Assembly (NCBI GenBank): GCA_002269645.1
Contig: NIVC01000629.1
Coordinates: 62,001 to 126,000, forward strand
Reading direction: 5' to 3'
From: Macrostomum lignano
Lineage: Eukaryota
DNA: 64,000 bases
Shown here piece by piece: positions 3,872 through 55,232 of the stretch. A program made the translations under genes and the position numbers. Under the pieces are notes generated by a model, which ran no database searches, was not told the DNA's origin, and saw only the letters and a program-made list of their open reading frames with translations. Every line of letters starts with the position of its first letter. Within the stretch, counting starts at the first letter, position 1.

Positions 3872-4121
3872 TACATGTAGTTTTCCATACTGATAGATTC
3901 TGATTCAGAGGAAGCTGAAGTTCGAGTACTAGGATGAAGGCGCTTGCGATGCCCAAGTGAAATACCTAATGGAGTCATGCCTAAAAATGAAACTTGTGTG
4001 GGCACCGCCAATTCCTCTTTCAACTGATACTGCCGCGTACATATTTCACTGGTGTACAATTAACGGTAAAGTAAAATTTTAACCTTGAATTTGAACTCGT
4101 GAACTCACCACTAATCTTCAG

Positions 4122-17752: not shown

Positions 17753-20700
17753 TTAGTGAGCCGGTTTCGCCGTGTTCAGCAGCGCCAAGGCCTCTGGTGA
17801 GAGAACCGCCATGCGGCCGAGGTCTTGGGCAGCCCGACGTACCGCAGCTTCTAGGGCAACCGCGTGGTGCCGGTACGGCAACAGAAGAGTACGAGTCCGG
17901 CAGAAGGCTTTGTTGATCAATGCCTGACGTTTTGTCTCCGTCTTGGCCTTTAAGGCTACTACCTGGGGCGTGGGCCAAGCTGTTATGTCCCCGGTGTAGG
18001 CGGCCTTCAGCAACACGGAGACAAGCATGTTCTCTAGTGGCTTGTTTGTCTGCGCCTGGCAGGCTGTTCCGCCGTGAGTCGGCACTGCCTCCCGCGGGGG
18101 GGGGGCGCTGTGCTTTCCCAGCCGTTCCTGAACTGAAAGATGCTCTGTGGACCGCCAATTGGCTGCGCGCTGCCCCGAGCGGCTCCTTGAGGTGCCCGAG
18201 ATCGTCCGGCCTCGTCCCCTAGACGGGGGACGGTCCAGCAAGGCCGTCCTTCGCTGCGCCGGCTCTGTCTGAGGTCCGGCTGCGGCCTGTATGTTCGTGT
18301 CGACCTGAAGCAGCGCCCTTCTCACTATCCCGACGGGAGCCACGACCTGTGGGCCCGATGGCACTGGCGCTGGTTTCGTCGTTACACGTCCCGCATCGGG
18401 GCGCGGTGACGACACGTCCTTCGGGTCAAATGACTCGTCCGAGGCAGACAGCGACAGCTGCTGCTCAAGAGGCATGTCCGAATCGCTCATGATGAGGCTG
18501 GAATGCGGAAGATAGTGCCTTATTGTAGAGACAAAGGTATCCTTGATTCGAGAGACATAGGATTTAGCTTTAGGATTTAGCATTAGTCTCTCCGGGGCTC
18601 GGCGGTCTCTCTGTGGGCGCTCAGCGACAGGCTGAGGGTCCGGGGGCACCGCTTCGGGCTGTTCTATTTCCCTGTGTGCTTCAGGTTGCTCATGAACAGC
18701 TTCCCCATCCTCATTCATTTCAGGTTCGGCGACTTCTGGGATCGCTGCTAATGCTGCGGCCGGACGCAGAAAGTAGCGCGGGGCCCAGTCGTCATCATCG
18801 TCATCGAGCTCGTCAACGTCGTCGGCGGCTTCGCCGGTATTCTGAGAGGCAGTGGTTTCTAGGGCAACGCGACGCTTATGCGGCGGCCCAGCACGGTGCT
18901 CAGCTGCCCGGCCAGCCGGCTCTGGATAGTCAGCTTGCGGAACCGGTAGCATATTGCGACGGTGCACCACCAACTCCTCTCGACGAGCCCTAGGATTCCG
19001 GAGGCGAGGTCTGATCTTGTAGACAACTTCTCCTTTGCGCTCTACTACTTCATACACAGCCTTGCGCGGTCTGTGAAATTTCTGCGCTTCCCAAGACTGA
19101 TCTAAGACTGGATTGTTCAGGAAGACTAGGTCACCCGGTGAGAGCTGCTTGGCCTTCGGGCGATTCTCATAATGTTCATCGCGAAGTTCTTGATGCAGCT
19201 TCACACGGTCCTGGGCTAATTTATTAGCCTCCTCTAGTCTCTTCTGGAAGTCTTGGACGTACGTTGGCAAGTCCGGATATTCAGGTGGGACCCGAAGCTC
19301 ATTATCAATGGGCATCCGGTATTCTCTTCCAAAGACCAAGAAGTAGGGCGTAAACCCTGTTACCAGGTGAACGCTAGATCGCAGAGCGATCATGCATGCT
19401 GGGAGGAAGGTGTCCCAATCCTGGTGATTCTTCTCCAGCAAGCACGTGAGTACACTCTTGATTGTCTTGTTGAGATTTTCCACCTGGCCATTCGAACTAG
19501 GATTATAAGGCGTTGTGGTCGTGTGCCTAATGCCGTACAGCTCACAAAACTTCTTAAAGTCCTTTCCAGTGAAATTCGTTCCTTGGTCGGTGTGCAGCCA
19601 CGCTGGTACACCATACTCCGGAAACAATCTCTCCTGAAGAATCTTGACTACGGTCTTGGTTTTCTGGTTCCGCATAGGGAACGCAAAAGGGTATTTTGAA
19701 GTAGCATCGCACAGAGTCAGAATATAGCGGTGGCCAGCTCGCGAAGGCTGCGAGATTGGGCCGACAACGTCGCAGTGTAGCCGTCCCATTACTTCACAGA
19801 CTGGGAAGCTCTGCACGGGCACAGCTTCGCGACGGCGAGTCTTGCTCTCCAGGCAGACTCGACATCGGGCCACGTAGGCCTTAACCGCTTTGCTCAAAGA
19901 CGGCCTCCAAAACCTTTGTCTAACCCGAAGATAGGTCTTAGTTTCGCCAAGGTGTCCACTCAAGGGAGCATCATGGAGCTCTTTGAACACCTGGTCATCT
20001 AGACTCTTCGGCAGCACAATGCGCGGTGGACGGTCTGCTATGTCTTCATCGTAGACGAGCAGGTTGTCTACTAGCCGCAACATCTCAAAGTAGCCTAGTA
20101 GGTTGCGCGTATCCCTACTAAGACGTAGTCGGGCGTCAAAGGACGGCTTGGGCGAACTAGTCGCTAAAAGATTTCTGACGAACTCAATGTCCGGGTCCTT
20201 CTGCTGCTCGAGGAGCAGTTGGTCTCGCTTCAGAGGTTCGGACAGAAAATCACTAAGCAGAACACGACAGCGTGGAGGAACATCCTCACTAACGCTACGG
20301 TTCGCTGATTCCGTTATTGAAGCAGATAATGGCCTTGCTGCGTCGTCGGTCTGGATCTCTGCGGTCAGGTCACCTGAGACACGAGGGCGAACAGCTTCTA
20401 TGGCCGTAGGTGCGGTAGTGTGGCGTCCAACTGGGGCAAAGTCCACAGCTAAACCAGCAACCTTGGCTGCCCATTCCGAGCGGCGGTCCACTGAGGGACA
20501 ACATGTCGCATCAGCCTGGCAGACAGCCTCGGACGCTCCCGCCGAACAACGGTTCACTGAGGAACAACATGTTGAGTCGGCAGAAACGGCCGCAATAACG
20601 GGTGTCGGACATCGGTCCACTGAGGGACAACATGATGAGCCGGCGACGGCAATACGAGATTCCTGCGAGGCAGAACTGCTGGAAGTTACTTGGCTGGTGT

Positions 20701-23122
20701 CTTCGACTAATCGGAGGGCTGAGGGTACAGTGGCCTCATTGTCTGTCTGGTTGGGTGTCCGTGCTCCAGGACGACAGTCATCGAACTCCGGACCGTCCGG
20801 CTTTCTTGATAAGCTGTCTGCGTTCTGGTGCAAACTTCCCTTCCGATGAATGACAGCAAAGTCGAATTCACTTAGCCGTTCAACCCAACGACCCAAGATC
20901 TCTTCGGCTTCAGTCTGGCGAATGAGCCAAAGAAGAGCCCTGTGGTCTGTTCTAACCTCAAATCTCTTGCCGATTAAGTAGTAACGAAAGTGCCTCATCG
21001 AGTCAACAACGGCCAAAAGCTCACGCTTGGTGTTGTTGTACCTCGTTTCAGGCTCGCGCAATTTCCGACTAAAATAGGCAACAGGCCGCTCCGCACCATC
21101 GGATTGGCGCTGGCCTAAACAGGCGCCGATTCGGAAACCGGAGGCATCACAATCCAGGACGAAGACTGTGTCTGGGTCTGTGTTGTACTCTGGGTACGCG
21201 AGGACCTCAGTAGAGCACAGCTTCTTCTTGAGCTCATCGAAAGCTTTCGAGTGTTGCTCTGTCCAGAGCCCTTGAACCCAACAAGGTTCTTCCGAGTCAA
21301 TTGATGCAACGGGGCAGCAATTTCGGCGTAATTCTTGACGAATTTGGCATAGTAGTTACAGAGACCTAGAAAGCTCTGCAGCTGCTTGACTGTCTGAGGA
21401 CGCGGCCAGTCTAGTATCTGCTGTACCTTGTCTTCATTAGTCCTAATGCCTCGTCTGTCGACTACATGTCCGAGATAGTGCAACTCTGTCTTAAACAGAT
21501 GGCATTTGCGTGGCTTTAGCTTAAGATTGGCTTCAATGAGCCGCCTGAACATTTCGCGAAGATGTTCGAGGTGCTCCTCGAAGGCAATACTATGAATGAC
21601 AATGTCATCCATGTATCCTAAGGCGAACTTAGTGATACCGTCTAGCAGCATATTGATGCATCGCTGGAAGGCTCCGGGGCTATCGCGAAGTCCCATAGGC
21701 AAGACGTTGAACTCGAACTGACCTCGATTGATCACTGAGAAGGCTGTGCGAAAACGATCCTCTTCACGCAACGGGATCTGATAGAACCCTTGAGCAAGAT
21801 CCAAGCTGCTGAACCATTGAGATCCACGGAGACATGCAAACGTCTCCTGGATAGATGGCAACGGATATGGACGATATTTGCATCTCTCATTCAGCTCGCG
21901 ATAGTCGTGGACTATGCGGACTGATTTATCCTTCTTAGGTACTACTAAGATAGGAGAGCTGTAGCTTGAATAAGATGGCCTGATCACGCCCTTCTCTAGC
22001 ATCTCATCTAGCAGCTGATTGACCTGATCTTGCAGGTGCGGGGGGGACCCTGCGAGCTGGAATCCTAACTGGAGTCTCGTCTCGCATGACAATCTGATGG
22101 GTCACCAGGTGAGTCAGACCGTGATCAAGAGTGTGCGTGGAGAACGCATTACGTGACTCTCTGATCAGCTCTCGAACCTGGGACTTCTGGTCCTCCGTGA
22201 TCGAATCGCCTATCTCTATCTCATTGATCCAATCGTCACTGGCTGAATTGATGTTATCGTCTAGGTGCAACTTACGCACAGGTGTTGCTTTCAGTTCTGG
22301 ATAGTACTCGAGGTCTTGCGTCCGGAGCGGTGTGGCAAGGCCCACCAAGGCTCCTTTGGCTATATTAACTGGAAAGTTGTTAGGATTAACGACTTCCATG
22401 CAGCCTTTGCCTTCATGCATCGTTACCAATGCAGCAGAGGCGCGGACCTGGGAAAGCCCAGCGCGGAGTCCAGATCTGAGTGGTTCAACCACTGCTGGCA
22501 CTCCATAATTCGATTTTTTGCCACGTGCCAGTTGCACAGAAATGAGGCCAGAACTTCGAGCAGGAATCTGATGTTTTCCGGCAACATAGACTCTGCACGA
22601 GGTTGGCTCACGGCGCGTATAGCGCACGGGTACACAAGTACCAGTAGTGAGGGTAAGCATTCCTGTCTGGAACTCCAAGGTCCGACAGTGCTTCCTCATA
22701 AAATCAATGCCTAGGAGATTCTCCTGATCGCCGCTTACAATGTAGAATTCAGCTTCAGCTGAGAAATCTCCGAAGACAACATCAAGCATAACCTTACCGG
22801 TTAGCTGTAATTCAGAACCATCATAGGTTAGAATACGATCGGAATAAGTAGGTGTAACTACGCATGCATGTGCAGTATTGCGCGATAACAATCGCCAAGT
22901 AGAAAGGCCCATCAGGTTCAGTCTGCTCCCGCTGTCGAGAAGCAAGGGAACCTGTTGGCCGAAAATAAGCGCAGTTACATAAGGATCAGCACCAGAGTTA
23001 TATACATTATTTACAAAGGAAGAGTCTACGGTATCGCCAGACTCTCCAGACTGCTTTAGTGCGACTTCGGGGGTTGGCCCTGGAGAGGGTCCTGGTTGGC
23101 AACCCCCGCCCGGACGTTTCCC
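17753..23122 (-). CDS. pol: Gypsy pol (protease, RT, RNase H, integrase, long C-terminal extension), reached by -1 frameshift; interrupted by +1 (22040-22046) and -1 (21269-21271) indels
   Basis: PR LLDSGS; RT SLDLAQGFYQI..PMGL..YMDDIV; RH LDCDAS..KRELLAVV..TDHRAL; IN HHCC, HCDVVGP, HTDQGTNF, NGQVENLN. Protease and RH-IN ORFs share one frame; the RT ORF is offset by one. Confidence 0.93.
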
Positions 23123-23994
23123 GGCTTCTGAGCCTTGAGCTTAGGACAGTCAGGCCTCTTGTGGCCTGGTTTACCGCACTCGTGGCACACAATGCCTTGC
23201 AGCCTATCTCTGACAGGTGCGGCTGGCGTCTGCTTGAGAAGCTGCTCAAGCATCTGCTGCTGCTGCTGCAGAACCTCATTCTGATGCCTGATTAGATTCT
23301 TAAGCTCATCGTCCTGTCGGGGAACCGTAGCTTTGTCCCCACCAAGGCTGCGACAGGGTGCGTCTTTGCTGCGGGCAGCAAGCTCACGCGCTGTCTCAAT
23401 GCGCTTGAAGGCGAACTTGGCGTCCTGTAGAGTCTCTGGACGACCCCAGTACAGCCGTTCTCTCGCCTCAATTGTAGTTCTGACACCTTTCAGGAACTGA
23501 TCAACAAGTTCTGATTCGAGCTGAGCTGGCAAGAGATAAGGATAAGCGAGTTCTCCGAGTTCGCGGAGAGCATCTGCAAACTCGTCAATGTCCTCGTTCT
23601 TGCGCTGAGTTCGGCAGCGGAAATCTTCTCGGAATTCCTGCGAGCCGCCTCTCTTTGAGAATCTCTCAATCAGCGCTTCCTTAAACACTTCGTACTCAAG
23701 ATGGTCTGGCAAGTTCAGGCGCAGGACCAAAGCATACGCCGTGTGCACGTCAAGGTTGGCGAGCAACTCCGCCTTCCTGTGGCAGGCACGAATGTCTTCG
23801 GTATCGCAGCGAAGATCGAAGGCTTTGATCCACGTGCGGATGTCTTGGGACGGCGTGTATTTAGCCATCTTGACATGCTGCCTGACTTGGCCTATACCAA
23901 GCTGGCGCTCCAGTGCATCGGCGAGACGATCGAGACGTTCGCCTAGTACCGGTGCCTCAGCTCCGGCTCCAGCACCATCATCAGGTGGTGCCAT
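23056..23994 (-). CDS. gag: Gypsy gag with CCHC zinc knuckle
   Basis: ATG 23994; capsid-like region; CHECGKPGHKRPDC; TAA 23056-23058. Confidence 0.93.
   Translation of the reverse strand: MAPPDDGAGAGAEAPVLGERLDRLADALERQLGIGQVRQHVKMAKYTPSQDIRTWIKAFDLRCDTEDIRACHRKAELLANLDVHTAYALVLRLNLPDHLEYEVFKEALIERFSKRGGSQEFREDFRCRTQRKNEDIDEFADALRELGELAYPYLLPAQLESELVDQFLKGVRTTIEARERLYWGRPETLQDAKFAFKRIETARELAARSKDAPCRSLGGDKATVPRQDDELKNLIRHQNEVLQQQQQMLEQLLKQTPAAPVRDRLQGIVCHECGKPGHKRPDCPKLKAQKPGNVRAGVANQDPLQGQPPKSH
23068..23122 (-). promoter_or_regulatory. Programmed -1 ribosomal frameshift signal
   Basis: G GGA AAC heptamer in the gag frame (23122-23116), 7-nt spacer, 9-bp stem CGGGGGTTG (23108-23100) / CAACCCCCG (23076-23068). 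Pol is in the -1 frame and open from just upstream. Confidence 0.85.
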
Positions 23995-24086
23995 TGAAGC
24001 ACGACTGCTGGCAATAGACATTGCTATGATTACTAAGTGAGACTAAGACGTAGGTGGACGAAGGATTGACGTGGTCGTTTTACCGG

Positions 24087-27248: not shown

Positions 27249-29277
27249 TTAAGCCAGTCCAGTGATGCCAGACTTGCGGAATATTTCTTTCAATTCGCCG
27301 CTCTCGTGAAATCTTTTGATCTCAAACTCGCCTCCGATGTGCCGGCCGTCAACGAACAGGTGAGGCACCTGTTTGAATTGGGATTTGGGATTGATCAGTT
27401 GAGGCTGTAATTCACTTGGAATTTGAAGTAGTTGCTAAGGGGTGTAGTTTTGGCTTTTGGTGAGCCTGTTTGCGGGGTAGTTTTAGCTGTTGGTGGAGTA
27501 CATGTAGTTTCGGCTGTAGGTGGGGTAGTTTCGGCTGTAGGTGGGGTAGTTTCGGCTCTAGGTGGGGGTAGTTTCATTTTTTATTGCGCTTCAAAAGTAT
27601 ACAGTACTGTATATAGTGTAGGGGTCTACTTTCGCCTATCATCGTGGCAGACAGGCAGACCAGGCCCATGCAGCTGCAGTTTACAGCAGCACATCGCTTG
27701 CAGTCGACCTACCGCAAATGCGTCTTCTGCATCTTTAACCCAATTGTGTGTTTGGCTTTATGCAAAAGCAGAAAAGTTTTTCCTTCAATACAAATTGCAG
27801 GGATGCTGCAGCGTATGCAAGCAACAGCGCGCAGCAGCTGCTGACAGAAACCCTCCCCCATCGGTGAAGAAGGCGCTCGGGGTGGGGGGGGGGGGTTACG
27901 GCTCTGTCGAAGCAGAAATTCGCAAATCGGAAACTTTATAAGAATAAAAGAAAAAAGCTATTTTTGTTGCAGAGAAGTGCGCTGGCTCTGCATGTCACTG
28001 TGCTACTCCGTAGACATTCTTGTTTGCTTGTTTGCTGCGGAAACAGCTGTTGCTGCTTTCGTCTCCCTCTCTCTCTCTCTCCCTCTCTCTCTCTTCGCAT
28101 CTTTGACTTATTGTGAACTGGAAACGGGACAAGACGATCAGGAAAAAAAAGTTTGTAACTAAAAAATGGGCCTTTGCGGACGAACGAATTGTACTTTTTA
28201 TATAACAATAAGTGCATACATCGTTTGAAAATGGTGCGTTACGATTTTAGTATGGAAACCCTGGTATAACTCGTAAAAAACTTTCATTTCATTTGAGCGG
28301 GGCGCCATTTTGTTTGAACGTGGCGCCAATGCATTCAAGCGGGGGAGCCATCTCATTTGAATTTATTTGTGATATTCCATCAAATTTTTCTGTTTATATT
28401 GAGTCTCAAAAAGGTACTGATTCAGCAAGGTCACGGGCATGAAGTGCGCTGAAATAAAAACAGCCTTAAGACTTGGGATTTACAATCCTAAATAGAACTG
28501 GCAGTTGCGGTTTTACTGGCTTTCCTACTGCGAAATTGCGTCCCTCGGGGGGGGGGGGCTCGGGCAATGGGCCTACATTGCATCCACAGCTTCCCTCTCA
28601 ATGCTGGACCAGAGGCCGAAGCCCCAGACAGAGCGGCGTCCTACCACACGTTTTATTTGCTTGACTTTGTATAATATAAATGCTAAGCATCAAGTTTACA
28701 GTACTGCGTGACAAATGTAGCAAAAAGTTTCTGTTTCTCGTATTTACTGTAAGCTATATTAACTTGATATTTAAATGTGCTACTTTTAGTAGGCTATTAA
28801 GAAAGGGGAAGCCTACCTACACAGGGGTGTCCCCATGGATTTTATGGTGCAGGTGGGAGACTAACCAAAAATTATAGACGAAAAATCCCCCCCCCCCCTA
28901 TTACGCTTGTATTTAGGAATCAGTGTTGTTATTACTGCGCATGATTTTTGGCACTGCAGACAATCATTTTGGCGCCACAGGTGCTCAGGCCATTAATTTA
29001 GCGCCGCATCTACCGGTACTCCTGAGCATACATGTAAAATTTGACTTACTTCTCTCCTATCAAACAGCGTCTTAGTGAGGAGATAGTCTTCCAGCTGCGA
29101 ACAGTCGGTCCTAGCCTCGATGTTGACAGTTTCGAATACACCCTGGCGATCTTTATTGAGCCCGTACGATTCCAGAATAACTCGGCACTGCTTGCACGAT
29201 GGCACTGAGGATTTTTCGAAGAGAACAACCTTTCTGTGGCGGATCTTTTTCTCGACATAGCCCTGCGTGTAGGTCAT
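27249..29277 (-). CDS. Glutaredoxin-fold protein, 115 aa, atypical active site; exons 29277-29050 and 27368-27249
   Basis: MTYTQGYVEKKIRHRKVVLFEKSSVPSCKQCRVIL..FETVNIE..QLEDYL..RRE|VPHLFVDGRHIGGEFEIKRFHESGELKEIF aligns with the Grx1 pattern (KVVVF.K..CPYC, TVP..F, IGG, ..SGEL). Donor GTAAGT 29049, acceptor aaacag 27369, phase 0. The ORF track missed exon 2. Confidence 0.85.
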
Positions 29278-35420: not shown

Positions 35421-37066
35421 GGAAGAACGAAGAAGAAAAAAAAAGGAAACCGCTAGCGGGTTTAGCTCCACGACCTTCCAGCCCCTCGGCGCGGTCAACA
35501 CCTTAGGCATTAGAGGGCAGCAATTAGCAGTGCCAGGTCCTGCAGTCTGGCTGCATACCCTGTTACGATCAAAGGGTATCACCTCTATCTCAGAGCCGTA
35601 GCCAGAGGCACCTGATCACGCACAAGTAGGGTAAGTGCACCGGAATAAGTGGACAAAAGGCGTCCAACCGTCCGTCGCAATTTTGTAATTTTCCAGTGTC
35701 GCGTCGCGGCTGCAGTCAAGGCAGGTGATGTCGCGGCGCGTTGCAGTTTTTGAATAAACCGTAAGAGTAACTTAACAGTCTTATTGAGGCTACATGCCTC
35801 GTCATCTAATTAGTACTACGCCTGTATTCGGTGCGAAAGTTAATATGTTCTGTGTCGCGTCGCGTTTTTGAGCTACAATTTTAGACCCCGTGTCGCGTGT
35901 CCGCAGGTTTTTTACACTTATTCCAATAGGGCGGATAGCCCGTACCTTTTGCAGCATATTGCCAAAGGCCGAAAACTTCGGAAGGGTGACCAGCGCTGAG
36001 CGTGGAGATTAAATCTCCAGCCACGCCTGCTCTAAAAAAGAGGTTGAGCAGGTGTAAAACATCCCAGACTGCAGCTCGAGGGCCTGTCTCATTTCATAGG
36101 CATCCTGTACCTACCGCTGTTAGCTCCAACTCAGCCTAATTCGGCGTGCAATCTGTCTAATTCAGCCTAAAAGCAGCCAGTTCGGCTTATATTCAGCTAA
36201 TTTATTTCTCCCGATCTGTCTAATTCGGAGTTCTCTCTGTTTCCGTTTCCTGTCTTAGGACATTGTGCCGTGTGGGGGGGGGCAACATAAGCTAGGCAAA
36301 ATAGACAATTATAGTCCACTAAGTTCGTGTGATGGCGTCACAGCCAAGTATATTTTCGATAGGCCAACAAAGACGTCGCGAAAAAACAGACAAGATCTGG
36401 CAAGGTTTCTACCTCGCGTGTCGGATCCGAGATCCTCACTAATACGAAATGCTTCTTTTGCCAACTTTAGCTTTGATCAGTATCAATCTGTCCAGTTTGC
36501 TTAGTCTTTCATAATAATGTTGCATTCCGAGTAACTTGAGTCCGGCTTGTGTAGCTAGCTGTGCACACTTTCTAAACTTGATACACACTGGCGGCTTTAT
36601 CAGACGATGCTTGATCGATTGCATTTTTCGAAAATTTGAATTAGGGTGCGTTGAGAACGGTCCTTTGGCCATAGACATTCTCAGCGAGCGGTCTGCCGTG
36701 AGTTCCAATAAAAGTTGACGAATTCGATGGAGAGATCCATGCCTGTGGCTTGCGAAGGGAGGTAGGGAGCTTTCGAACTACAGTAGGACGTCTCGAACAC
36801 GTCTAAATTGTAGTATTCACTAATCAGCAACTAACGAACGAGCGCAAATAACTGCAAATCAAATGCGAGTATTTTTAGCCATTTTGGCTGTGACCGTCCA
36901 TCTGTTTATAGGAAAAAAGCTGTCCTTTATGCTTCTGTCTATTTATTTAAAGCCAAATTGCGTCAAGTGAACCAACAACATAGTAGGCCAGTCAATAACT
37001 TTGCTGTAAATTGCTTTTGCCATGCAGTCATGTCTCATTCTGGGTGGTTATCACTGCGACTTTTTT

Positions 37067-37600
37067 CTAGAACGGAGTGCGCTTCTTCCAGAAAGGATCC
37101 CGCTTCCAGAATGGAGCACGCTTCCAGAATGGAGCCCGCTTCCAGAATGGAGCACGCTTCCAGAATGGAGCCCGCTTCCAGAATGGAGCACGCTTCCAGA
37201 ATGGAGCACGCTTCCAGAATGGAGCACGCTTCCAGAATGGAGCCCGCTTCCAGAATGGAGCCCGCTTCCAGAAAGGAGCACGCTTCCAGAATGGAGCCCG
37301 CTTCCAGAATGGATCCCGCTTCCAGAATGGAGCCCGCTTCCAGAATGGAGCACGCTTGTCCTCTTTCAAAGCGTCGTGATCCGGCATCTCCATCTCAGCA
37401 GCGTCGCTCTCCTCGCCAAGCATTCGTTCGTCATCAGACGCTGCTACAGTCGCCGCTTCAACAGCCGCCTCGTGCCGTTGCAGGCCGCCATGGTCAGCGT
37501 GTCTGGCCGAAGTGGCTTCGGCTGCTTCAGCTGACGCGGTGACCAACGCAGCAGAGAGTATCAGGCAGAGGCCAGCTCGAAGGATGGCAGAACCCCGCAT
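37067..37600 (-). CDS. Neuropeptide/peptide-hormone precursor, 177 aa: 13 x APFW, 2 x DPFW and terminal TPF, separated by KR
   Basis: ATG 37600; signal peptide MRGSAILRAGLCLILSAALVTASA; acidic propeptide; dibasic sites flank every tetrapeptide. Variation between repeats is mostly synonymous (CGG/CGT, CCA/CCT). Likely 5'UTR acceptor tccgtag at about 37636. Confidence 0.9.
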   Translation of the reverse strand: MRGSAILRAGLCLILSAALVTASAEAAEATSARHADHGGLQRHEAAVEAATVAASDDERMLGEESDAAEMEMPDHDALKEDKRAPFWKRAPFWKRDPFWKRAPFWKRAPFWKRAPFWKRAPFWKRAPFWKRAPFWKRAPFWKRAPFWKRAPFWKRAPFWKRAPFWKRDPFWKKRTPF

Positions 37601-42211: not shown

Positions 42212-45131
42212 ATGGCAAGCAGGCCATTCGGCGGTGGCCGCAAGAGCACCCTGGTGCCAATCAACACCAAGGCAGCGCCGCCAGAGCCGGATTCCGGCCT
42301 AGGGACGCCGTGCATCTCGTCGGCGTCAACGGACTCCTCGTCCGGCGGCTCGTCCGGGCGACGTAGGCGAGCAAATCAGCCGCTGAGGACCAGCTCCTCG
42401 GATGACGACAGCGCCGAGGACACCAGCAGCTGCGCCTCCTCCACCTGCCAGGTTTACCGTCGGGCGCCGGGCTTCCTGGACCATGCGCACGCTCACCCGG
42501 TGCAGCAGCACAGAGCAGGTGACGGAAGATTCTGTGTCTTTCATCAGATGTCCCTGCAGTGTCCTCCATCAGCTGTCCCTACAGTGTCCTCCATCAGCTG
42601 TCCCTGCAATGTCCTCCATCAGATGTCCCTGCAGTGTCCTCCATCAGCTGTCCCTACAGTGTCCTCCATCAGATGTCCCTGCAGTGTCCTCCATCAGCTG
42701 TCCCTGCAATGTCCTCCATCAGCTGTCCCTACAGTGTCCTCCATCAGATGTCCCTGCAGTGTCCTCCATCAGCTGTCCCTACAGTGTCCTCCATCAGATG
42801 TCCCTGCAATGTCCTCCATCAGCTGTCCCTACAGTGTCCTCCATCAGCTGTCCCTGCAGTGTCCTCCATCAGCTGTCCCTGCAATGTCCTCCATCAGCTG
42901 TCCCTACAGTGTCCTCCATCAGATGTCCCTGCAGTGTCCTCCATCAGCTGTCCCTGCAATGTCCTCCATCAGCTGTCCCTACAGTGTCCTCCATCAGATG
43001 TCCCTGCAATGTCCTCCATCAGATGTCCCTACAGTGTCCTCCATCAGATGTCCCTGCAGTGTCCTCCATCAGCTGTCCCTACAGTGTCCTCCATCAGCTG
43101 TCCCTGCAATGTCCTCCATCAGCTGTCCCTACAGTGTCCTCCATCAGATGTCCCTGCAATGTCCTCCATCAGATGTCCCTACAGTGTCCTCCATCAGATG
43201 TCCCTGCAGTGTCCTCCATCAGCTGTCCCTACAGTGTCCTCCATCAGCTGTCCCTGCAATGTCCTCCATCAGATGTCCCTGCAATGTCCTCCATCAGATG
43301 TCCCTGCAGTGTCCTCCATCAGCTGTCCCTGCAGTGTCCTCCATCAGCTGTCCCTACAGTGTCCTCCATCAGCTGTCCCTGCAGTGTCCTCCATCAGATG
43401 TCCCTGCAGTGTCCTCCATCAGCTGTCCCTGCAATGTCCTCCATCAGCTGTCCCTGCAGTGTCCTCCATCAGATGTCCCTGCAGTGTCCTCCATCAGCTG
43501 TCCCTGCAATGTCCTCCATCAGCTGTCCCTGCAGTGTCCTCCATCAGATGTCCCTGCAGTGTCCTCCATCAGCTGTCCCTGCAATGTCCTCCATCAGCTG
43601 TCCCTGCAATGTCCTCCATCAGCTGTCCCTGCAATGTCCTCCATCAGCTGTCCCTGCAGTGTCCTCCATCAGCTGTCCCTGCAGTGTCCAGCTCCATCCT
43701 GCCCTGCTTACTTATTAAAGTAAACAAATCAATGCATTCTCTTTCGCAAAAACTTCTCCGAATTGAACTGGATAGGCGGCGGCCGTCTGAAGGAGAAGCG
43801 CGCCCTTCTTCAGCAGCAGCAGCAGCTTCCGTCCGTGGCCCCAGTAGCCGCCAGCGTTCCCATGCGAAGCCGCCACCTTCCCAAGTCGATGTGGCAGGAG
43901 CCGGACGAAGCCAGCTACAGTCCGGCCACACTGCTGCCGCGGCTGGCTCTGCACCGTAGCGTCGACGACGTCTCCGAGCTGGGTAAGAAGAGCGAACCTG
44001 ATTGCCCATCCTACTTTTAGTAGGCTTTGCGCGTATTTTTCGGCCTAATGGGCAAAAGCTTATCAAACTGATTTTTAACTGCAACCAAAGACCTGAAGAA
44101 ACATTTTTTCTCTCATGCGTGCTTCATCTGTCCGCAATTTACCCACAGGCCTAACCGGCAGTTCCCCGTTTAGAAACCGGTGCGCGGCGGGCGGCCCGCT
44201 TAAACCGCCGATTCGAACGGTGCTCAACTTGGATCCGAGCGAGTGCCTGCAGAGGAAACTCTTTGAGGTGGCGCTGAAGCCTCCGCCAGCCATTGAGCAG
44301 CAAAAGAAGCAGCAGCAGCTCCGGCCAACTGACCGGTGAGTCACCGGAGACTTCCTTCTTCATCTCTGGTTGAGAGCGCTTTGCCTGGGATCCCTGTGAA
44401 TGACATTGAGCTGTTCACCTTGAATCTCTGTGAATGATATTGAGCTGTTCACCTTAAATCTCTGTGAATGATATTGAGCTGTTCACCTTGAATCTCTGTG
44501 AATGATATTGAGCTGTTCACCTGGGATTTCTGTGAATGATATTGAGCTGTTCACCTTGAATCTCTGTGAATGATATTGAGCTGTTCACCTTGAATCTCTG
44601 TGAATGATATTGAGCTGTTCACCTTGAATCTCTGTGAATGATATTGAGCTGTTCACCTTGAATCTCTGTAAATGATATTGAGCTGTTCACCTTGAATCTC
44701 TGTGAATGACATTGAGCTGTTCACCTTAAATCTCTGTGAATGATATTGAGCTGTTCACCTTGAATCTCTGTGAATGATATTGAGCTGTTCACCTGGGATT
44801 TCTGTGAATGATATTGAACTGTTCACCTGGGATTTCTGTGAATGATATTGAGCTGCTCACCTGCGATTCCGAGAAAGCATCTATGATACTCACAAAGGAT
44901 TTCCGTGCAAGAATGCAAAAAAATGGCAAAAACATGGCAACATCCCGCAGCCTGCAGCCCATAGCGCAGAGACCGCCAGTGGGCAGCAAGTCCAGCTTTC
45001 TATCCAACAATGATCCCTGCCTGAGTGACTGCAATAAATTTCCCTACCTGGGCCGGACAGGTCTGGCCGCGGCTGTGCTGTCCGACTCGTCTGACTGTCT
45101 GCACCAGCAACAGCCCCTGCAGCAGCAACTG

Positions 45132-48331: not shown

Positions 48332-50276
48332 TTAACTAAGAAACGGATCCTTTGGCGGAGCTTTGCTAGCGGCCGGGCCGCCGCCGCCGCCACTGGCCGA
48401 GTTCAACAGGTAGCCGGCCACCTGGGGAGTGCCCGCCGTCAGGTAGCCGGCCACAGACGGCGCGTTGGAGATGAACAGGTCGTGCAGCTGGTCTTTATAG
48501 TCCTTCCACACCGGGGAAGCGTCCAGGATGGCACCGACCTGGGCGATGGGGACATTGGGAGGCTGAGTTAGGGATTCGGCGTTGGGACTGAGGCGATTCA
48601 CGGTTGGGACTCAGGTGATTCACGGTTGGGACTCAGGTGATACACGGTTGGGAATCAGGTGATTCACGGTTGGGACTCAGGTGATACACGGTTGGGACTC
48701 AGGTGATACACGGTTGGGACTCAGGTGATTCACAGTTGGGACTCAGGTGATTCACGGTTGGGACTCAGGTGATACACGGTTGGGACTCAGGCGATTCACG
48801 GTTGGGACTCAGGTGATTCACGGTTGGGACTCAGGTGAATCACGGTAGGGACTCAGGTGATTCACGGTTGGGACTCAGGCGATTCACGGTTGGGACTCAG
48901 GCGATTCACGGTTGGGACTCAGGTGATTTACGGTTCACTGACTCACTCCAATCGGGACTCACTGACTCACTGCAATTGGGACTCACTGACTCACTGCAAT
49001 CGGGACTTACTGACTCACTCCAATCAGGACTCACTGCAAGTAGGACTCACTGACTCACTGCAATTGGGACTCACTGCCACCGGGAATCACTGACTCACTC
49101 CAATCGGGATTTCACAGCTCACCCTCTCCCCGTGCTGAAGCGACTTCTGCAACGCCTTGAGCGCATTGACCACCTGCGCCTTGGTGGCCCCCGGATTTTC
49201 CACCCGCTCCAGGCCGGACTGCAGCAATCCGAGCAGGTGCTGCACCAGGCCGCAGGTGAGCGCCTGCTCGGCAGCCAGATCCTCCTGACCCTCGGCCAGA
49301 CGCAGCACAGTCTCGCAGGCGTAGGCCAGCAGATCCGGCCGCTGCTCCATGCCCCGCTTAACCGAGCGTAGGCAGTGGCCGGCCGACACCAGCGACCGGA
49401 CGCAGCCAGTGTTAGCCGAGAAGGCGTGCAGCATCAGCAGGCAGGAGCGCAGGGCGCCGGCATCTCAGAGGTGGCCAACGCGTCCAGTAGCTGAGGAAAA
49501 TATCCCAGCTGAGGCAGGGAGTCCAGCAGGGCCGGCTGGGTGGCAACCAGACCAACCATGGAGGAGGTGACCAGCTCCAGCAGCTGGGCGTCGGCCTGTA
49601 CACCCCGGCGAACCAGTTCAATCCACTTGTCCATCAGGCAGCGGGTGAACTCCTTGGGGTTGCGCAGCACCCAGCCGGGGTTCTGCACAAACAGGCGCAG
49701 GTAGACTCCGCCAACGACTGGCTCGCCGCCCACGCAGTCATTGGAATCCCCGGCCGCGATGAAGGGCATTCGAAAGTCCTCAGGGATGTTCCACTTGACG
49801 GCCGGGTCCAGCACCTGGCGGTGGTAGAACTCGCCGCGCATCCTGGCGACCGTCTGACTGACGTCGGAACGAGTGTCGTCATTCCACAGGAGCTCCGGGT
49901 TTTCCTGATTGGGGAGGCAAAAACCTTTGCTTACTACTGATAGTAATACTGATCTTATTTGATTTTAAATGATTGATACTGATTAATCAATCTATTGAGT
50001 AATAATCCATAATTCATTTATTGTCTATTAATAAAACAGTCGATCAACAATCAAACAGATAGTCAATAAACCAATCAATCAATCAATCAATCAATAATCA
50101 ATCAATCAATCATTAATCAATCAATCAACTGAAATCATCAATCAATCAATCAATCAATAATCAATCAATCATTAATCAATCTATCTATCTATCGATCAAT
50201 CAATTGAAATTATCAATCAATCAAAAATCTAATCATTAGTCAGTCAGTCAGTCAGTCAATCATCAATCGATCAATA

Positions 50277-50309
<33 letters not shown>

Positions 50310-51416
50310 TCAATCAATCAATCATTATTCAATCAATCAACTGAAATCATCAATCAATCAATCAATCAATAATCAATCAATCAATAATCAATCAATCAAT
50401 AATCAATCAATCATTAATCAATCAATCAACTGAAATCATCAATCAATCAATCAATCAATAATCAATCAATCAATCATTAATCAATCAATCAACTGAAATC
50501 ATCAATCAATCAATCAATAATCAATCAATCAATCATTAATCAATCAATCAACTGAAATCATCAATCAATCAATCAATCAATAATCAATCAATCAACTGAA
50601 ATCATCAATCAATCAATCAATAATCAATCAATAATCAATCAATCAACTGAAATCATCAATCAATCAATCAATCAATAATCAATCAATCATTAATCAATCT
50701 ATCTATCTATCGATCAATCAATTGAAATTATCAATCAATCAAAAAATTCAATCATTAGTCAGTCAGTCAGTCAGTCAATCATCAATCGATCAATAAATCA
50801 ATCAATCAATCTGCAGCCGTACCCAGCCGCGCAGCTGGTCTGTCTCACCTGACTGGTCTCAAACATATTGACGGCCGTCTCCGGGGCGTCACGCATCGCG
50901 TCAACAAAGATGGCGGGCAGGAACTTGTTGAGGATGAGGCGAATCCGCGGCCCAACCAGCTTGTTGGCCGTCAGCTTGGCCAGCAGCTGGGCCGCCTGCT
51001 GGCGCAGCTCCTGATCTGAGGAGCTGCAGAACAGGTCCAGCAGGTGGATGATGACGCCCCTGTACACGGAGTCCTTCACCAGGTCCGTGTGCGACATCAG
51101 CGGGCTGAGCGTGCTGAGCAGCAGGCCGTGGCACTCGGGCAGAGTCTGGAACAGCATCACCAGATAGCAGAGCACGTTTGCTGCCGCGATGTCCTTCACG
51201 CATTCCTGATTCTCCGTGACGCAGCTGATCACCTGCGGCGGGCGGGGTTGGTTGCTGGGTGCAGCCTGTGCCTGTCTGTCTGTCTGTCTGTCTGCCTGTC
51301 TGTCTGTCTGCCTGCCTGCCTGTCTGTCTGCCTGCCTGTCTGTCTGTCTGTCTGTCTGTCTGCCTGTCTGTCTGTCTGTCTGCCTGCCTGCCTGCCTGTC
51401 TGTCTGTCTGTCTGCC

Positions 51417-51449
<33 letters not shown>

Positions 51450-54400
51450 GCCTGTCTGTCTGTCTGTCAGTCTGTCTGTCTGTCTGTCTGCCTGTCTGTC
51501 TGTCAGTCCCTCAGACCATCGGCTCACCTCAAGCGCCCTCTGCATGGTGGTGTGACAGCCGTTGAGCCTGAGCAGGGCGAACAGCAGCTGGAAGTAGCCG
51601 ATGCACTGCATCTCAACCCCGGATGATTTCTAATAACGTTGCGCAGAGCCTCAAGCGCGGCGTCAACTTTAGTGAGGTTGCGCCGCTGGTCGTCGTTGAG
51701 AATCAACGTCTCCTGCTGGTCCCGCTGCATTGCCAGCAGCGAGTGCAGGTACTGGGCGCTCGTGTTCAGGTAGTGCAGAATGTCTATGGTCAAGCCTTTG
51801 GGATTCTGCGGTATCAGACGGGAGTTTGGGTGGCCCATTGGGATGCGTGGAGGTCACTAAAGCACTGAGATGTGTAGAGAAGGTCACTGAAGCACTGAGA
51901 TGTGTAGAGAAGGTCACTGAAGCACTGAGATGTGTAGAGAAGGTCACTGAAGCACTGAGATGTGTAGAGAAGGTCACTGAAGCACTGAGATGTGTAGAGA
52001 AGGTCACTGAAGCACTGAGATGTGTAGAGAAGGTCACTGAAGCACTGAGATGTGTAGAGAAGGTCACTGAAGCACTGAGATGTGTAGAGAAGGTCACTGA
52101 AGCACTGAGATGTGTAGAGAAGGTCACTGAAGCACTGAGATGTGTAGAGAAGGTCACTGAAGCACTGAGATGTGTAGAGAAGGTCACTGAAGCACTGAGA
52201 TGTGTAGAGAAGGTCATTGAAGCACTGGAAAGAAAAGGTGAAGATTCCCCATCCAATGGTTACCTCCAGCGGATAAGTCGGCTGCTCATTGTACACTCGA
52301 ATGAAAACGTCTCCGATGATGAGCTCCTTGCCGAAGATGCTGTACTGGAACTCGGTGCCCAGCGATTGGTCGCACTCGCCCTGGAAGGTCAAACACGAAT
52401 TTAGTCTATGGGGCTGGTTTGGGGCGATTCTCAGTCTGGTTTAGGGGCGATTCTCAGGATGGTTTAGGGGCGATTCTCAGGATGGTTTAGGGGCGATTCT
52501 CAGTCTGGTTTAGGGGCGATTCTCAGTCTGGTTTAGGGGCGATTCTCAGTCTGGTTTAGGGGCGATTCTCAGTCTGGTTTAGGGGCGATTCTCAGTCTGG
52601 TTTAGGGGCGATTCTCAGTCTGGTTTAGGGGCGATTCTCAGTCTGGTTTAGGGGCGATTCTCAGTCTGGTTTAGGGACGATTCTCAGTCTGGTTTAGGGG
52701 CGATTCTCAGTCTGGTTTAGGGGCGATTCTCAGTCTGGTTTAGGGATGATTCTCAGTCTGGTTTAGGGGCGATTCTCAGTCTGGTTTAGGGGCGATTCTC
52801 AGTCTGGTTTAGGGGCGATTCTCAGTCTGGTTTAGGGGCGATTCTCAGTCTGGTTTAGGGGCGATTCTCAGGATGGTTTAGGGGCGATTCTCAGTCTGGT
52901 TTAGGGACGATTCTCAGTCTGGTTTAGGGGTGATTCTCAGGATGGTTTAGGGGCGATTCTCAGTCTGGTTTAGGGGCGATTCTCAGGATGGTTTAGGGGC
53001 GATTCTCAGTCTGGTTTAGGGACGATTCTCAGTCTGGTTTAGGGGTGATTCTCAGGATGGTTTAGGGGTGATTCTCAGTCTGGTTTGGGGCGATTCTCAG
53101 TCTGGTTTGGGGCGATTCTCAGTCTGGTTTAGGGGCGATTCTCAGTCTGGTTTAGGGGCGATTCTCAGTCTGGTTTAGGGGCGATTTTCAGGATGGTTTA
53201 GGGGTGATTCTCAGGATGGTTTAGGGGTGATTCTCAGTCTGGTTTGGGGCGATTCTCAGTCTGGTTTAGGGGCGATTCTCAGTCTGGTTTAGGGGCGATT
53301 CTCAGTCTGGTTTAGGGGCGATTCTCAGTCTGGTTTAGGGGCGATTCTCAGTCTGGTTTAGGGGCGATTCTCAGTCTGGTTTAGGGGCGATTCTCAGTCT
53401 GGTTTAGGGGCGATTCTCAGTCTGGTTTAGGGGCGATTCTCAGTCTGGTTTAGGGGCGATTCTCAGTCTGGTTTAGGGGCGATTCTCAGTCTGGTTTAGG
53501 GGCGATTCTCAGTCTGGTTTAGGGACGATTCTCAGTCTGGTTTAGGGGCGATTCTCAGTCTGGTTTAGGGGCGATTCTCAGTCTGGTTTAGGGATGATTC
53601 TCAGTCTGGTTTAGGGGCGATTCTCAGTCTGGTTTAGGGGCGATTCTCAGTCTGGTTTAGGGGCGATTCTCAGTCTGGTTTAGGGGCGATTCTCAGTCTG
53701 GTTTAGGGGCGATTCTCAGGATGGTTTAGGGGCGATTCTCAGTCTGGTTTAGGGACGATTCTCAGTCTGGTTTAGGGGTGATTCTCAGGATGGTTTAGGG
53801 GCGATTCTCAGTCTGGTTTAGGGGCGATTCTCAGGATGGTTTAGGGGCGATTCTCAGGATGGTTTAGGGGCGATTCTCAGGATGGTTTAGGGGCGATTCT
53901 CAGTCTGGTTTAGGGGTGACTTAACAAACAAACCAACTAACAGCTCTGATTTCAGGCTCCGTTGCAGAGGCCCCACTCACAGTGCGAATCAGACTCTGCT
54001 GCTGGTCCTCCAAATAGCCCAACAGTTCGGCCCTGGTCGCATTGTCCCAGATTAAATATGGCGTCTGGCAATTGGAATTCAGCAGCTTCAGCAGCCAGCC
54101 TGGCCGCTGGTCCTGCATTCGGCGGCAAACAAACGGCGTGACCAGAGCCTTCAGCGACTGCTGCACTGACGGATTGTCTGGATAGCAGGCGCCGCCGTCG
54201 CTGCTGCTGTTGCTCGCGTCTGCGGCCACTGCGGGGACGTCGTCTGAGGCCTCGGCTCGGCCAGGCTCGCCCGAGTCGACCGCTACGGCCACTGTCGGGG
54301 AGGTGGCGACGGCACGATAGCCGGCCAGGGCGGAGCAGGCCCTGAGGGCGGCCTCGGCCAAGCGGTTGTTCTGCTCCTGCTGGTTGCTGTCCTCCGCCCG

Positions 54401-55198
54401 TTCAACGCCGCCCTCGTCCAGGGTGTAGTCGTAGCCGAATAGCAGCGGCAGCAGGTGGTAGAGCGCACCAGACTGGTACATGTTCGTCTGCAGCCAGAAG
54501 TCCAGGCAGAAGGCTGAGGGGGCGGGTTTGTATCAGTTAGCTGCGATAAGAGTGCGCTGCAAAGTAGTGGAGCCCTGAATTGGTCTGCCCACTGGCTCTG
54601 TATGATAACTGGCTACTATAACTATTCTGTGTAGATTATTATGCTTATTTTAGTACTTACTATTCAATTAAAGTAAATCAAAACTAAATGAACAAAAACG
54701 ACGACTACTACTACTGCTACTAGTACTACTACCACTACTACTGCTACTACTAATACTACTGGTACTACTACTACAATACTACTGGTACTACTACTACCAC
54801 CACTACTACTGGTACTACTAATACTACTGCTACTACTACTACAATACTACTGGTACTACTACTACCACCACTACTACTGGTACTACTAATGCAACTGCTA
54901 CTACTACTACTACTACTGCTACTGCTACTACTAATACTACCGGTACTACTACTACTACTACTACTACTGGTACTACTACTACCACCACTACTACTGGTAC
55001 TACTAATGCAACTGCTACTACTACTACTACTACTACTACCGCTACTGCTACTACTGGTACTACTACTACTGGTACTACTACTATTGCTACTACTACTACT
55101 ACTACTGGTACTACTACTACCACCACTACTACTGGTACTACTAATGCAACTGCTACTACTACTACTACTACTGCTACTGCTACTACTAATACTACCGG

Positions 55199-55232
<34 letters not shown>

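What the first reader, a model, noticed from the sequence alone, without database searches (positions are those of the whole stretch)
37067..37600. Prohormone releasing 15 non-amidated xPFW tetrapeptides (APFW/DPFW)
Seen: signal peptide, acidic spacer, then 13 APFW and 2 DPFW each flanked by KR, with no Gly for amidation. Codon variation among the 18-bp units is mostly silent, unlike the intronic minisatellites here, so it behaves like selected coding sequence. Known: molluscan APGWamide is a similar-looking amidated tetrapeptide, and achatin is a free-acid tetrapeptide. I do not recognise APFW as a named family. Inference: a possibly undescribed, lineage-specific neuropeptide or pheromone.
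Basis: partly seen in the sequence, partly recalled or inferred. Interest (0 to 1): 0.75.

Follow-up and report, generated by a model that had tools for sequence, protein, structure and literature searches.

The report
Flatworm multi-copy APFW peptide precursor gene
This is a real, well-formed gene of the flatworm Macrostomum lignano for a secreted precursor that should be cut into 15 copies of a four-residue peptide ending in Phe-Trp; its closest matches by motif and architecture are tapeworm proteins that databases already label "Neuropeptide", so it is most likely a new member of a known kind, not a new kind of signal.

Summary
On the minus strand, 37600..37067 encodes 177 aa: a signal peptide, a 57-aa acidic spacer, 13 KR-APFW and 2 KR-DPFW units with no Gly, then KKR-TPF-stop.

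The window is Macrostomum lignano contig NIVC01000629.1. A second genomic copy has an identical CDS (0/534 differences). Its flanks differ by about 0.4-1%, and three neighbouring minisatellites differ by 4-19 copies.

An exhaustive HMMER search and two profile searches found the same architecture in other proteins: signal peptide, acidic spacer, x(1-6)FW units between dibasic sites, no Gly. These are:
- a metagenome protein that also encodes APFW and DPFW with diverged synonymous codons;
- tapeworm proteins from Dibothriocephalus, Spirometra, Schistocephalus, Taenia and Echinococcus.

UniProt names the E. granulosus and T. asiatica members "Neuropeptide".

"Neuropeptide-like prohormone" is therefore supported. 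"Lineage-specific, unrecognised family" is not, although similarity outside the repeat is undetectable. I found no paper in the searchable library that prints APFW or these precursors, and the key tapeworm catalogue (Koziol 2016) was not readable.

Transcription, cell type and the mature peptide could not be tested here.

Verdict: new member of a known kind, with unusual copy number. Interest is moderate to low.

The parts
37067..37600 (-). Complete single-exon CDS (177 codons plus TAG) of the APFW/DPFW precursor
   Evidence: The exact protein is found on two M. lignano contigs.
37529..37600 (-). Predicted signal peptide, aa 1-24 (MRGSAILRAGLCLILSAALVTASA, cleavage after A-S-A)
   Evidence: Hydrophobicity profile. 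The -3/-1 rule is applied by eye, so this is inference; no SignalP was available.
37358..37528 (-). Acidic Ala/Glu/Asp-rich spacer (pro-region), aa 25-81, net charge -13
   Evidence: The relatives have the same kind of region.
37088..37357 (-). Fifteen 18-bp units, each encoding Lys-Arg plus a tetrapeptide: 13 APFW and 2 DPFW (units 3 and 15)
   Evidence: The array is identical in copy number and sequence in the second genomic copy.
37067..37087 (-). Degenerate last unit KKR-TPF followed by the TAG stop
36942..36947 (-). AATAAA polyadenylation-type signal about 120 nt downstream of the stop
   Evidence: Read directly from the sequence. Its function is inferred.

Best explanation
This is a Macrostomum lignano gene for a secreted prohormone of the flatworm 'FW' peptide family.

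Proposed mechanism:
1. The signal peptide takes the protein into the secretory pathway.
2. A prohormone convertase (PC2-type) cuts after each Lys-Arg.
3. A carboxypeptidase E-type enzyme removes the basic residues.
4. Because no Gly precedes the dibasic sites, the products keep a free C-terminal Trp: 13 APFW-OH, 2 DPFW-OH, an acidic pro-peptide and a TPF remnant.
5. The peptides are most likely released from peptidergic neurons and act on a so far unidentified receptor.

What is shown and what is inferred:
- Shown: the ORF and its anatomy, the identity of the two genomic copies, and the matches to other FW precursors (similarity is confined to the repeat motif and architecture).
- Inferred: cleavage, the free-acid end, neuronal expression and receptor action.

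The 15 near-identical units point to recent amplification or homogenisation of one unit. This raises peptide dose per transcript; it does not add peptide diversity.
For: Anatomy.

Organism: the exact protein lies on two contigs of GCA_002269645.1, and the window is 100% identical to one of them.

Constraint within the genome:
- The CDS shows 0/534 differences between the two copies, against 0.4-1.1% substitutions plus indels in the flanks. P(0 differences) is 0.003-0.11 depending on which flank rate is used.
- The 34-, 25- and 21-bp arrays nearby differ by 4, 10 and 19 copies. The 18-bp coding array is 15.2 copies in both.

Relatives:
- phmmer against 1.84 billion representatives gave 106 hits at E<=0.001, mostly unrelated repeat proteins.
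- Profile searches recover D. latus, Spirometra, Schistocephalus, Taenia and Echinococcus members at E from 1e-43 to 1e-3.
- Two are named 'Neuropeptide' in UniProt.

Selection on the peptide: the metagenome relative P0001 encodes APFW, DPFW, EAFW and EPFW. Its Phe (TTT/TTC), Lys (AAA/AAG) and Arg (AGA/CGT/AGG/CGA) codons vary, yet FWKR is invariant in 8 of 8 units.

Free-acid end: the named tapeworm members (apart from the decayed D. latus copy) end exactly in FW-stop, which fits a free-acid FW terminus being the product.

Processing enzyme: M. lignano has a PC2 homologue expressed in the nervous system and essential by RNAi (PMC4490696).

Expression signal: AATAAA lies about 120 nt after the stop.
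Against: - No transcript, peptide or expression evidence for the M. lignano gene could be obtained. No partial ORFs from RNA-seq assemblies appeared in the protein database.
- Similarity to the tapeworm precursors is confined to the FW-KR repeat and the architecture. The N-terminal 80 aa give BLASTP E = 72, so convergence of a short motif cannot be excluded.
- The M. lignano precursor does not end in FW-stop as the tapeworm ones do.
- The 'Neuropeptide' label is a database name, not a tested function.
- No planarian homologue is in the Collins 2010 prohormone set. No trematode homologue was found.
- Identity of the two genomic copies could also reflect recent gene conversion.
Confidence: 0.72

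Rival explanations
1. This is a secreted multi-copy peptide precursor made by a non-neural cell type (epidermal, pharyngeal, adhesive or prostate gland). It would release APFW outside the body as a pheromone, seminal-fluid factor, defence peptide or antimicrobial peptide. Processing would be by furin/PC-type cleavage in the same way.
For: The anatomy fits any regulated-secretion precursor. Very high copy number of one tiny peptide is also seen in exported products: a fungal KR-flanked AIPFY repeat protein was among the hits (P0079). No expression data tie the M. lignano gene to neurons.
Against: The closest named relatives are annotated as neuropeptides. A parasite-to-free-living conservation of FW-COOH peptides fits internal signalling better than an ecological signal. 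Short peptides of 4-7 residues without Cys are atypical for antimicrobial peptides (own knowledge).
Confidence: 0.17
2. The repeat is not cleaved. The protein would act whole, as a small polycationic, aromatic-rich (Lys/Arg plus Phe/Trp) secreted protein, for example an adhesive, coacervate-forming or mucus component.
For: (KRxPFW)n is rich in cation-pi pairs. Cleavage itself was not shown.
Against: In relatives the spacing between FW and the next dibasic site is fixed, while the residues before FW vary in number (1-6). Precursors end in FW-stop. That is the pattern of a cleaved peptide, not of a structural repeat. An acidic pro-region that neutralises the basic repeat is typical of processed precursors (own knowledge).
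Confidence: 0.05
3. It is a non-coding 18-bp minisatellite that happens to be open in frame with an upstream ATG.
For: The window holds dozens of minisatellites. All six frames are open across the array. Within-array silent/replacement counts are not significant.
Against: It is the only sizeable array that is invariant between the two genomic copies. A signal peptide and acidic spacer precede it. Independent relatives in other species keep FW plus dibasic despite synonymous divergence.
Confidence: 0.03

Closest known systems
Tapeworm FW-peptide precursors: E. granulosus A0A068WEX8 and T. asiatica A0A0R3W293 (UniProt name 'Neuropeptide'); unnamed orthologues in E. multilocularis, T. solium, T. 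crassiceps, D. latus, Spirometra, Schistocephalus
   Same: Small size (about 100-180 aa), signal peptide, acidic spacer, tandem peptides ending in Phe-Trp directly followed by Lys-Arg, no amidation Gly. Hits are reciprocal in HMMER and profile searches. One D. latus gene even ends in APFW.
   Different: Tapeworms have 4-6 different peptides of 4-8 residues (SPHFW, SPAFW, SAFW, ASFW, SSFW, YGNQAFW, RANFW), and the precursor ends in FW-stop. M. lignano has 15 near-identical tetrapeptides and ends in KKRTPF. There is no detectable similarity outside the repeat.
Metagenome protein P0001 (ENA ERZ23491819, 660-bp contig, 30% GC, organism unknown)
   Same: The closest relative (E 5.5e-20 to 1.8e-20). 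It encodes the very same APFW and DPFW peptides plus EAFW and EPFW, all KR-flanked and all without Gly.
   Different: 8 units with well-diverged codons; ends in KRDGN; different signal and spacer sequence; AT-rich genome.
Molluscan APGWamide precursor (own knowledge)
   Same: Many copies of a tetrapeptide of the form Ala-Pro-x-Trp between dibasic sites.
   Different: APGWamide units carry a Gly for amidation and these do not. The conserved core in the FW family is FW, not AP-x-W: relatives have SAFW, SNFW and RANFW. There is no evidence of homology.
Achatin-type precursors (G-F-x-D free-acid tetrapeptides, own knowledge)
   Same: Multi-copy, non-amidated tetrapeptides between dibasic sites.
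   Different: The motif is unrelated. Achatin activity depends on a D-Phe at position 2, and here position 2 is Pro.
Yeast alpha-factor / fungal KEX2-processed repeat proteins and promelittin (own knowledge; a fungal example, P0079, was hit)
   Same: Works alike: tandem short peptides released at Lys-Arg. The N-terminal dipeptides here and in P0001 (AP, DP, EA, EP) are the X-Pro/X-Ala type that dipeptidyl aminopeptidases remove in those systems.
   Different: Unrelated lineages and functions. Dipeptidyl trimming here is only a possibility.

Membership tests
Flatworm FW-peptide (tapeworm 'Neuropeptide' A0A068WEX8-like) precursors | N-terminal signal peptide followed by an acidic spacer | tested here: met
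   Hydrophobic core aa 5-20, ASA|E motif, spacer net charge -13. No dedicated predictor was available.
Flatworm FW-peptide (tapeworm 'Neuropeptide' A0A068WEX8-like) precursors | Three or more tandem peptides ending in Phe-Trp, each followed directly by a dibasic site, without Gly | tested here: met
   15 units. FW, K and R are invariant columns in the alignments.
Flatworm FW-peptide (tapeworm 'Neuropeptide' A0A068WEX8-like) precursors | Recovered by sequence and profile search from and with the family | tested here: met
   phmmer from the window protein finds D. latus and Spirometra members. Profiles including it find Schistocephalus, Taenia and Echinococcus members.
Flatworm FW-peptide (tapeworm 'Neuropeptide' A0A068WEX8-like) precursors | Similarity outside the repeated peptides | tested here: not met
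   BLASTP of aa 1-81 against the D. latus N-terminal part gives E = 72. This is usual for neuropeptide precursors, but it means homology is inferred from motif and architecture only.
Flatworm FW-peptide (tapeworm 'Neuropeptide' A0A068WEX8-like) precursors | Precursor terminates in FW-stop | tested here: not met
   The M. lignano precursor ends KKRTPF-stop. The named tapeworm members apart from the decayed D. latus copy end in FW.
Flatworm FW-peptide (tapeworm 'Neuropeptide' A0A068WEX8-like) precursors | Expression in neurons and detection of the mature peptides | not testable with these tools
   No transcriptome or peptidome access. Koziol 2016 and Preza 2022 are not held.
PC2/CPE-processed prohormones in general | Dibasic cleavage sites flanking each peptide, and a processing enzyme present in the organism | tested here: met
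   There are 16 dibasic sites: 15 KR before the units plus the terminal KKR. A M. lignano pc2 homologue is neuronal and essential (PMC4490696). Cleavage itself is not shown.
APGWamide family | C-terminal Gly as amide donor (APGW-G-KR) | tested here: not met
   No Gly in any of the 15 units.
Achatin family | G-[FY]-[GA]-[DE] tetrapeptide with D-residue at position 2 | tested here: not met
   The motif is absent. Chirality is not testable.
Non-coding minisatellite | Copy number and sequence drift between genomic copies, with no coding context | tested here: not met
   15.2 copies in both genomic copies and 0/534 differences, while the three neighbouring arrays differ by 4-19 copies.
Any Pfam family | Match to a curated domain model | tested here: not met
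   No Pfam hit at or above a curated cut-off for the window protein or five relatives at E<=1; one relative had only a chance-level DUF6773 match.

The most novel reading that the evidence does not exclude
Free-acid peptides ending in Phe-Trp may form an old signalling system. It would be shared by the early-branching free-living Macrostomorpha and the parasitic Cestoda, and so be ancestral to rhabditophoran flatworms. It may reach further: unassigned environmental precursors carry x(n)[SA]FW-KR repeats plus a conserved RRPEFNPTGW end.

The receptor is unknown. M. lignano, with 15 copies in one exon and available RNAi and transgenesis, would be the tractable model for finding it.

A bolder variant: the N-terminal X-Pro/X-Ala dipeptides (AP, DP, EA, EP) are trimmed by a dipeptidyl aminopeptidase, leaving the dipeptide Phe-Trp as the active unit.
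Probability: 0.3. Interest if true: 0.55.

Novelty: new member of a known kind. Interest (0 to 1): 0.36.

Why it matters
Flatworm neuropeptides mostly lack counterparts in other animals. They are studied as drug targets in tapeworms and flukes, where functional tests are hard.

A clear Macrostomum member of a tapeworm peptide family has two uses. It dates that family to early in flatworm evolution. It also offers a laboratory model (RNAi, in situ hybridisation, transgenesis) in which receptor and function could be worked out.

The gene is a tidy example of how one peptide unit can be amplified to 15 near-identical copies. It does not reveal a new kind of signalling molecule.

Tried and rejected
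Literature:
- Full-text searches for APFW, PFWKR, AFWKR/HFWKR/FWKRS/FWKRA, SPHFW/RANFW/RENFW/SPAFW/NQAFW/SPFWK and FNPTGW/SFWKR/DSFWK/NFWKR found nothing relevant.
- Searches for Macrostomum neuropeptide papers found no neuropeptidome for this species.
- Koziol 2016, Tsai 2013, McVeigh 2009 and McVeigh 2012 are not held. Preza 2022 did not appear in the search.
- The Collins 2010 planarian prohormone supplement has no FW-KR precursor.
- Supplements of the T. crassiceps and S. mansoni papers gave nothing.

Sequence analyses that led nowhere:
- Pfam: no families.
- BLASTP of the non-repeat parts: no similarity.
- Most of the 106 phmmer hits were unrelated repeat proteins (xWK, PFG, PVHK and similar repeats) and were discarded after inspection.
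- The organisms behind the Logan and ENA relatives could not be identified.
- Within-array silent/replacement counting was rejected as statistically too weak.

Readings rejected: APGWamide and achatin membership, on motif grounds.

Left out as uninformative for a peptide precursor: structure prediction, and the bacterial promoter/terminator scan.

Full report
**1. What is in the sequence**

On the minus strand an ATG at 37600 opens a 177-codon frame that closes with TAG at 37069-37067.

- The first 24 residues, MRGSAILRAGLCLILSAALVTASA, have a basic start, a hydrophobic core and an Ala-Ser-Ala|Glu junction.
- A 57-residue Ala/Glu/Asp-rich spacer with net charge -13 follows.
- Then come fifteen 18-bp units, each encoding Lys-Arg plus four residues: 13 APFW and 2 DPFW (units 3 and 15).
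- The tail is Lys-Lys-Arg-Thr-Pro-Phe-stop.
- No unit has a Gly before the basic pair, so the products cannot be amidated by the usual route.
- Tandem Repeats Finder reports the array at 37085-37357: period 18, 15.2 copies, 94% matches.
- An AATAAA lies about 120 nt downstream of the stop, at 36942-36947 on the minus strand.
- Upstream there are splice-like signals: a ttgttttcag acceptor ending at 37771, and a possible 76-nt GT...AG intron at 37742-37667. I could not verify these without RNA data.

**2. Is it more than chance?**

- All six frames are open through the array, so ORF length means nothing.
- The within-array variation amounts to about three mutational events: Arg CGG/CGT, Pro CCA/CCT and Ala/Asp GCT/GAT. 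Two silent out of three is not significant.

Three other lines of evidence are stronger.

*The second genomic copy.* The window is Macrostomum lignano. The exact protein is on two contigs of assembly GCA_002269645.1, and the window is 100% identical to NIVC01000629.1. The other contig, NIVC01002328.1, carries a second copy of the region.
- Its CDS is identical at all 534 bases. The flanks differ by 0.4-1.1% substitutions plus indels.
- The chance of zero differences is 0.003-0.11, depending on which flank rate is used.
- The three other sizeable tandem arrays in the shared 20 kb differ between the copies by 4, 10 and 19 units. The coding array has 15.2 units in both.

*Relatives elsewhere.* See section 3.

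*Codon divergence in the closest relative.* P0001 comes from a 660-bp metagenome contig with 30% GC. It encodes KQFW, APFW (twice), DPFW, EAFW (three times) and EPFW, each followed by Lys-Arg. Its Phe, Lys and Arg codons differ from unit to unit, yet Phe-Trp-Lys-Arg is invariant in all eight units. That is purifying selection on the peptide and its cleavage site.

**3. Relatives**

The first word-indexed search gave three hits. Two had the same design: P0001, and a Dibothriocephalus latus gene model. The D. latus locus holds two tandem genes that the model had fused.
- One ends ...KRSPHFWKRYHAFWKRSPAFWKRSAFWKRAPFW-stop.
- The other has decayed cleavage sites.

An exhaustive phmmer run over 1.84 billion representative proteins returned 106 hits at E<=0.001. 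Most were unrelated repeat proteins. Among all 120 proteins fetched by that point, from that run and the first profile search, 17 small proteins carry three or more FW-dibasic units. All of them are signal-peptide precursors of 83-201 aa.

Two profile searches added Schistocephalus solidus, Spirometra, Taenia solium, T. asiatica, T. crassiceps, Echinococcus granulosus and E. multilocularis.
- The cyclophyllidean proteins read ...SPFWKRSSFWKRYGNQAFWKRRANFW-stop.
- UniProt names the E. granulosus (A0A068WEX8) and T. asiatica (A0A0R3W293) entries 'Neuropeptide'.

In every alignment the invariant columns are F, W, K and R. The residues before FW vary in kind and number.

Outside the repeats there is no detectable similarity between the M. 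lignano and tapeworm proteins (BLASTP E = 72). That is common for neuropeptide precursors, but it means homology rests on motif plus architecture. There is no Pfam family.

**4. How it most likely works**

The design is that of a classical multi-copy prohormone.
1. The protein enters the secretory pathway.
2. A PC2-type convertase cuts after each Lys-Arg.
3. A carboxypeptidase removes the basic residues.
4. Tetrapeptides with a free Trp carboxyl end are released.

Supporting points:
- The named tapeworm precursors, apart from the decayed D. latus copy, stop exactly after FW. This fits the free-acid FW end being the functional terminus.
- M. lignano has a pc2 homologue that is expressed in the nervous system and is essential by RNAi (PMC4490696), so the processing machinery exists.

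Neuronal expression of this particular gene, cleavage, and receptor action are inferences.

The near-identity of the 15 units indicates recent amplification or homogenisation. It gives a high peptide dose, not peptide diversity.

One speculative point concerns the N-terminal dipeptides here and in P0001 (Ala-Pro, Asp-Pro, Glu-Ala, Glu-Pro). They are of the X-Pro/X-Ala type that dipeptidyl aminopeptidases remove from alpha-factor, promelittin and, in cephalopods, APGWamide (own knowledge). Trimming to Phe-Trp is therefore conceivable. Equally, the Pro may simply protect the peptide from aminopeptidases.

**5. Rivals**

- *Non-neural secretory source* (pheromone, seminal or defence peptide). This cannot be excluded without expression data. 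I give it about 0.17.
- *Uncleaved polycationic-aromatic protein.* This is unlikely, because in relatives the distance from FW to the basic pair is fixed while the N-terminal part varies.
- *Chance ORF in a minisatellite.* This is contradicted by sections 2 and 3.

**6. Comparison with known families**

It works like any PC-processed multi-copy neuropeptide precursor.

Membership in the tapeworm FW 'Neuropeptide' family is supported by architecture, motif and reciprocal profile hits. Two features are not met: similarity outside the repeat, and the FW-stop ending.

It is not an APGWamide precursor, because it has no Gly and the conserved core is FW, not AP-x-W. It is not an achatin precursor, because the motif is absent.

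The D-amino-acid idea has no basis in the sequence.

**7. Literature**

No paper in the searchable library prints APFW, PFWKR or any of the tapeworm FW peptides. No M. lignano neuropeptide catalogue was found. The planarian prohormone supplement of Collins 2010 has no such precursor.

The tapeworm catalogue is Koziol et al. 2016: 325 npp sequences from 12 species, including D. latum, S. solidus, E. granulosus and T. solium, as described in PMC11196405. It very probably contains this family, but it is not held, so I could not give the npp number.

**8. Verdict**

This is a real gene, correctly described.
- The 'neuropeptide-like prohormone' reading stands.
- The 'undescribed, lineage-specific family' reading does not.
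- It is a new member of a known kind, apparently unreported for Macrostomum, with an unusually high copy number.
- Interest is moderate to low. Its main value is as a tractable entry point to a parasite-relevant peptide family.

Noticed in passing
Loci L009, L010, L012-L016 (proteins P0113, P0121, P0123, P0124, P0125): Precursors from environmental and Logan assemblies carry a signal peptide and 4-6 x(n)[SA]FW-KR units. P0113, P0121, P0123, P0124 and P0125 share a conserved C-terminal ...RRPEFNPTGW-stop. P0122 has nine D[SNHA]FW-K(K)R units instead. The organisms are unknown. The FW family may be wider than Macrostomum plus tapeworms.
   Followed up: partly
L006-L008 (protein P0007, Logan SRR22428377/79/80): A 571-aa protein with a Cys-rich N-terminal part and more than 25 KR-flanked peptides ending in Phe-Tyr (APFY, AAFY, xxSSFY). 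It is a similar multi-copy design with Tyr in place of Trp. The organism is unknown.
   Followed up: no
L004 9778-10132 and 15340-15669 (D. latus UYRU01043596.1): Two tandem FW-precursor genes were fused into one database gene model (P0002). The second copy has lost several dibasic sites (KQ, KH, GK) and looks like it is decaying.
   Followed up: partly
window 42534-43689, 44390-44862, 27504-27575: The 25-, 34- and 21-bp minisatellites differ by 10, 4 and 19 copies between the two M. lignano copies of this region. They served as an internal control for the invariant coding array.
   Followed up: yes
window 17753-24021 (-): ORFs of a Ty3/gypsy-type LTR retroelement: gag-like, protease-like, RVT_1, RNase H and integrase.
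   Followed up: partly
window 13750-16170 (+), 4099-6777 (+), 49087-61800 (-): Neighbouring host genes: a single-exon 806-aa LRR protein with a C-terminal membrane span; a tubulin-tyrosine-ligase-like gene; and a multi-exon gene with a GYF_2 domain whose introns are packed with minisatellites. It looks DNAJC13/RME-8-like by eye, which was not tested.
   Followed up: partly
protein P0079 (Cadophora sp., KAH7417843.1): A fungal protein with KR/KKR-flanked AIPFY repeats separated by acidic spacers. It is KEX2-processed-repeat-protein-like, a convergent analogue picked up by the repeat.
   Followed up: no
UniProt names of P0110/P0111 (Schistocephalus solidus): These FW precursors carry the automatic name 'RxLR effector protein', which is almost certainly a mis-annotation.
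   Followed up: no
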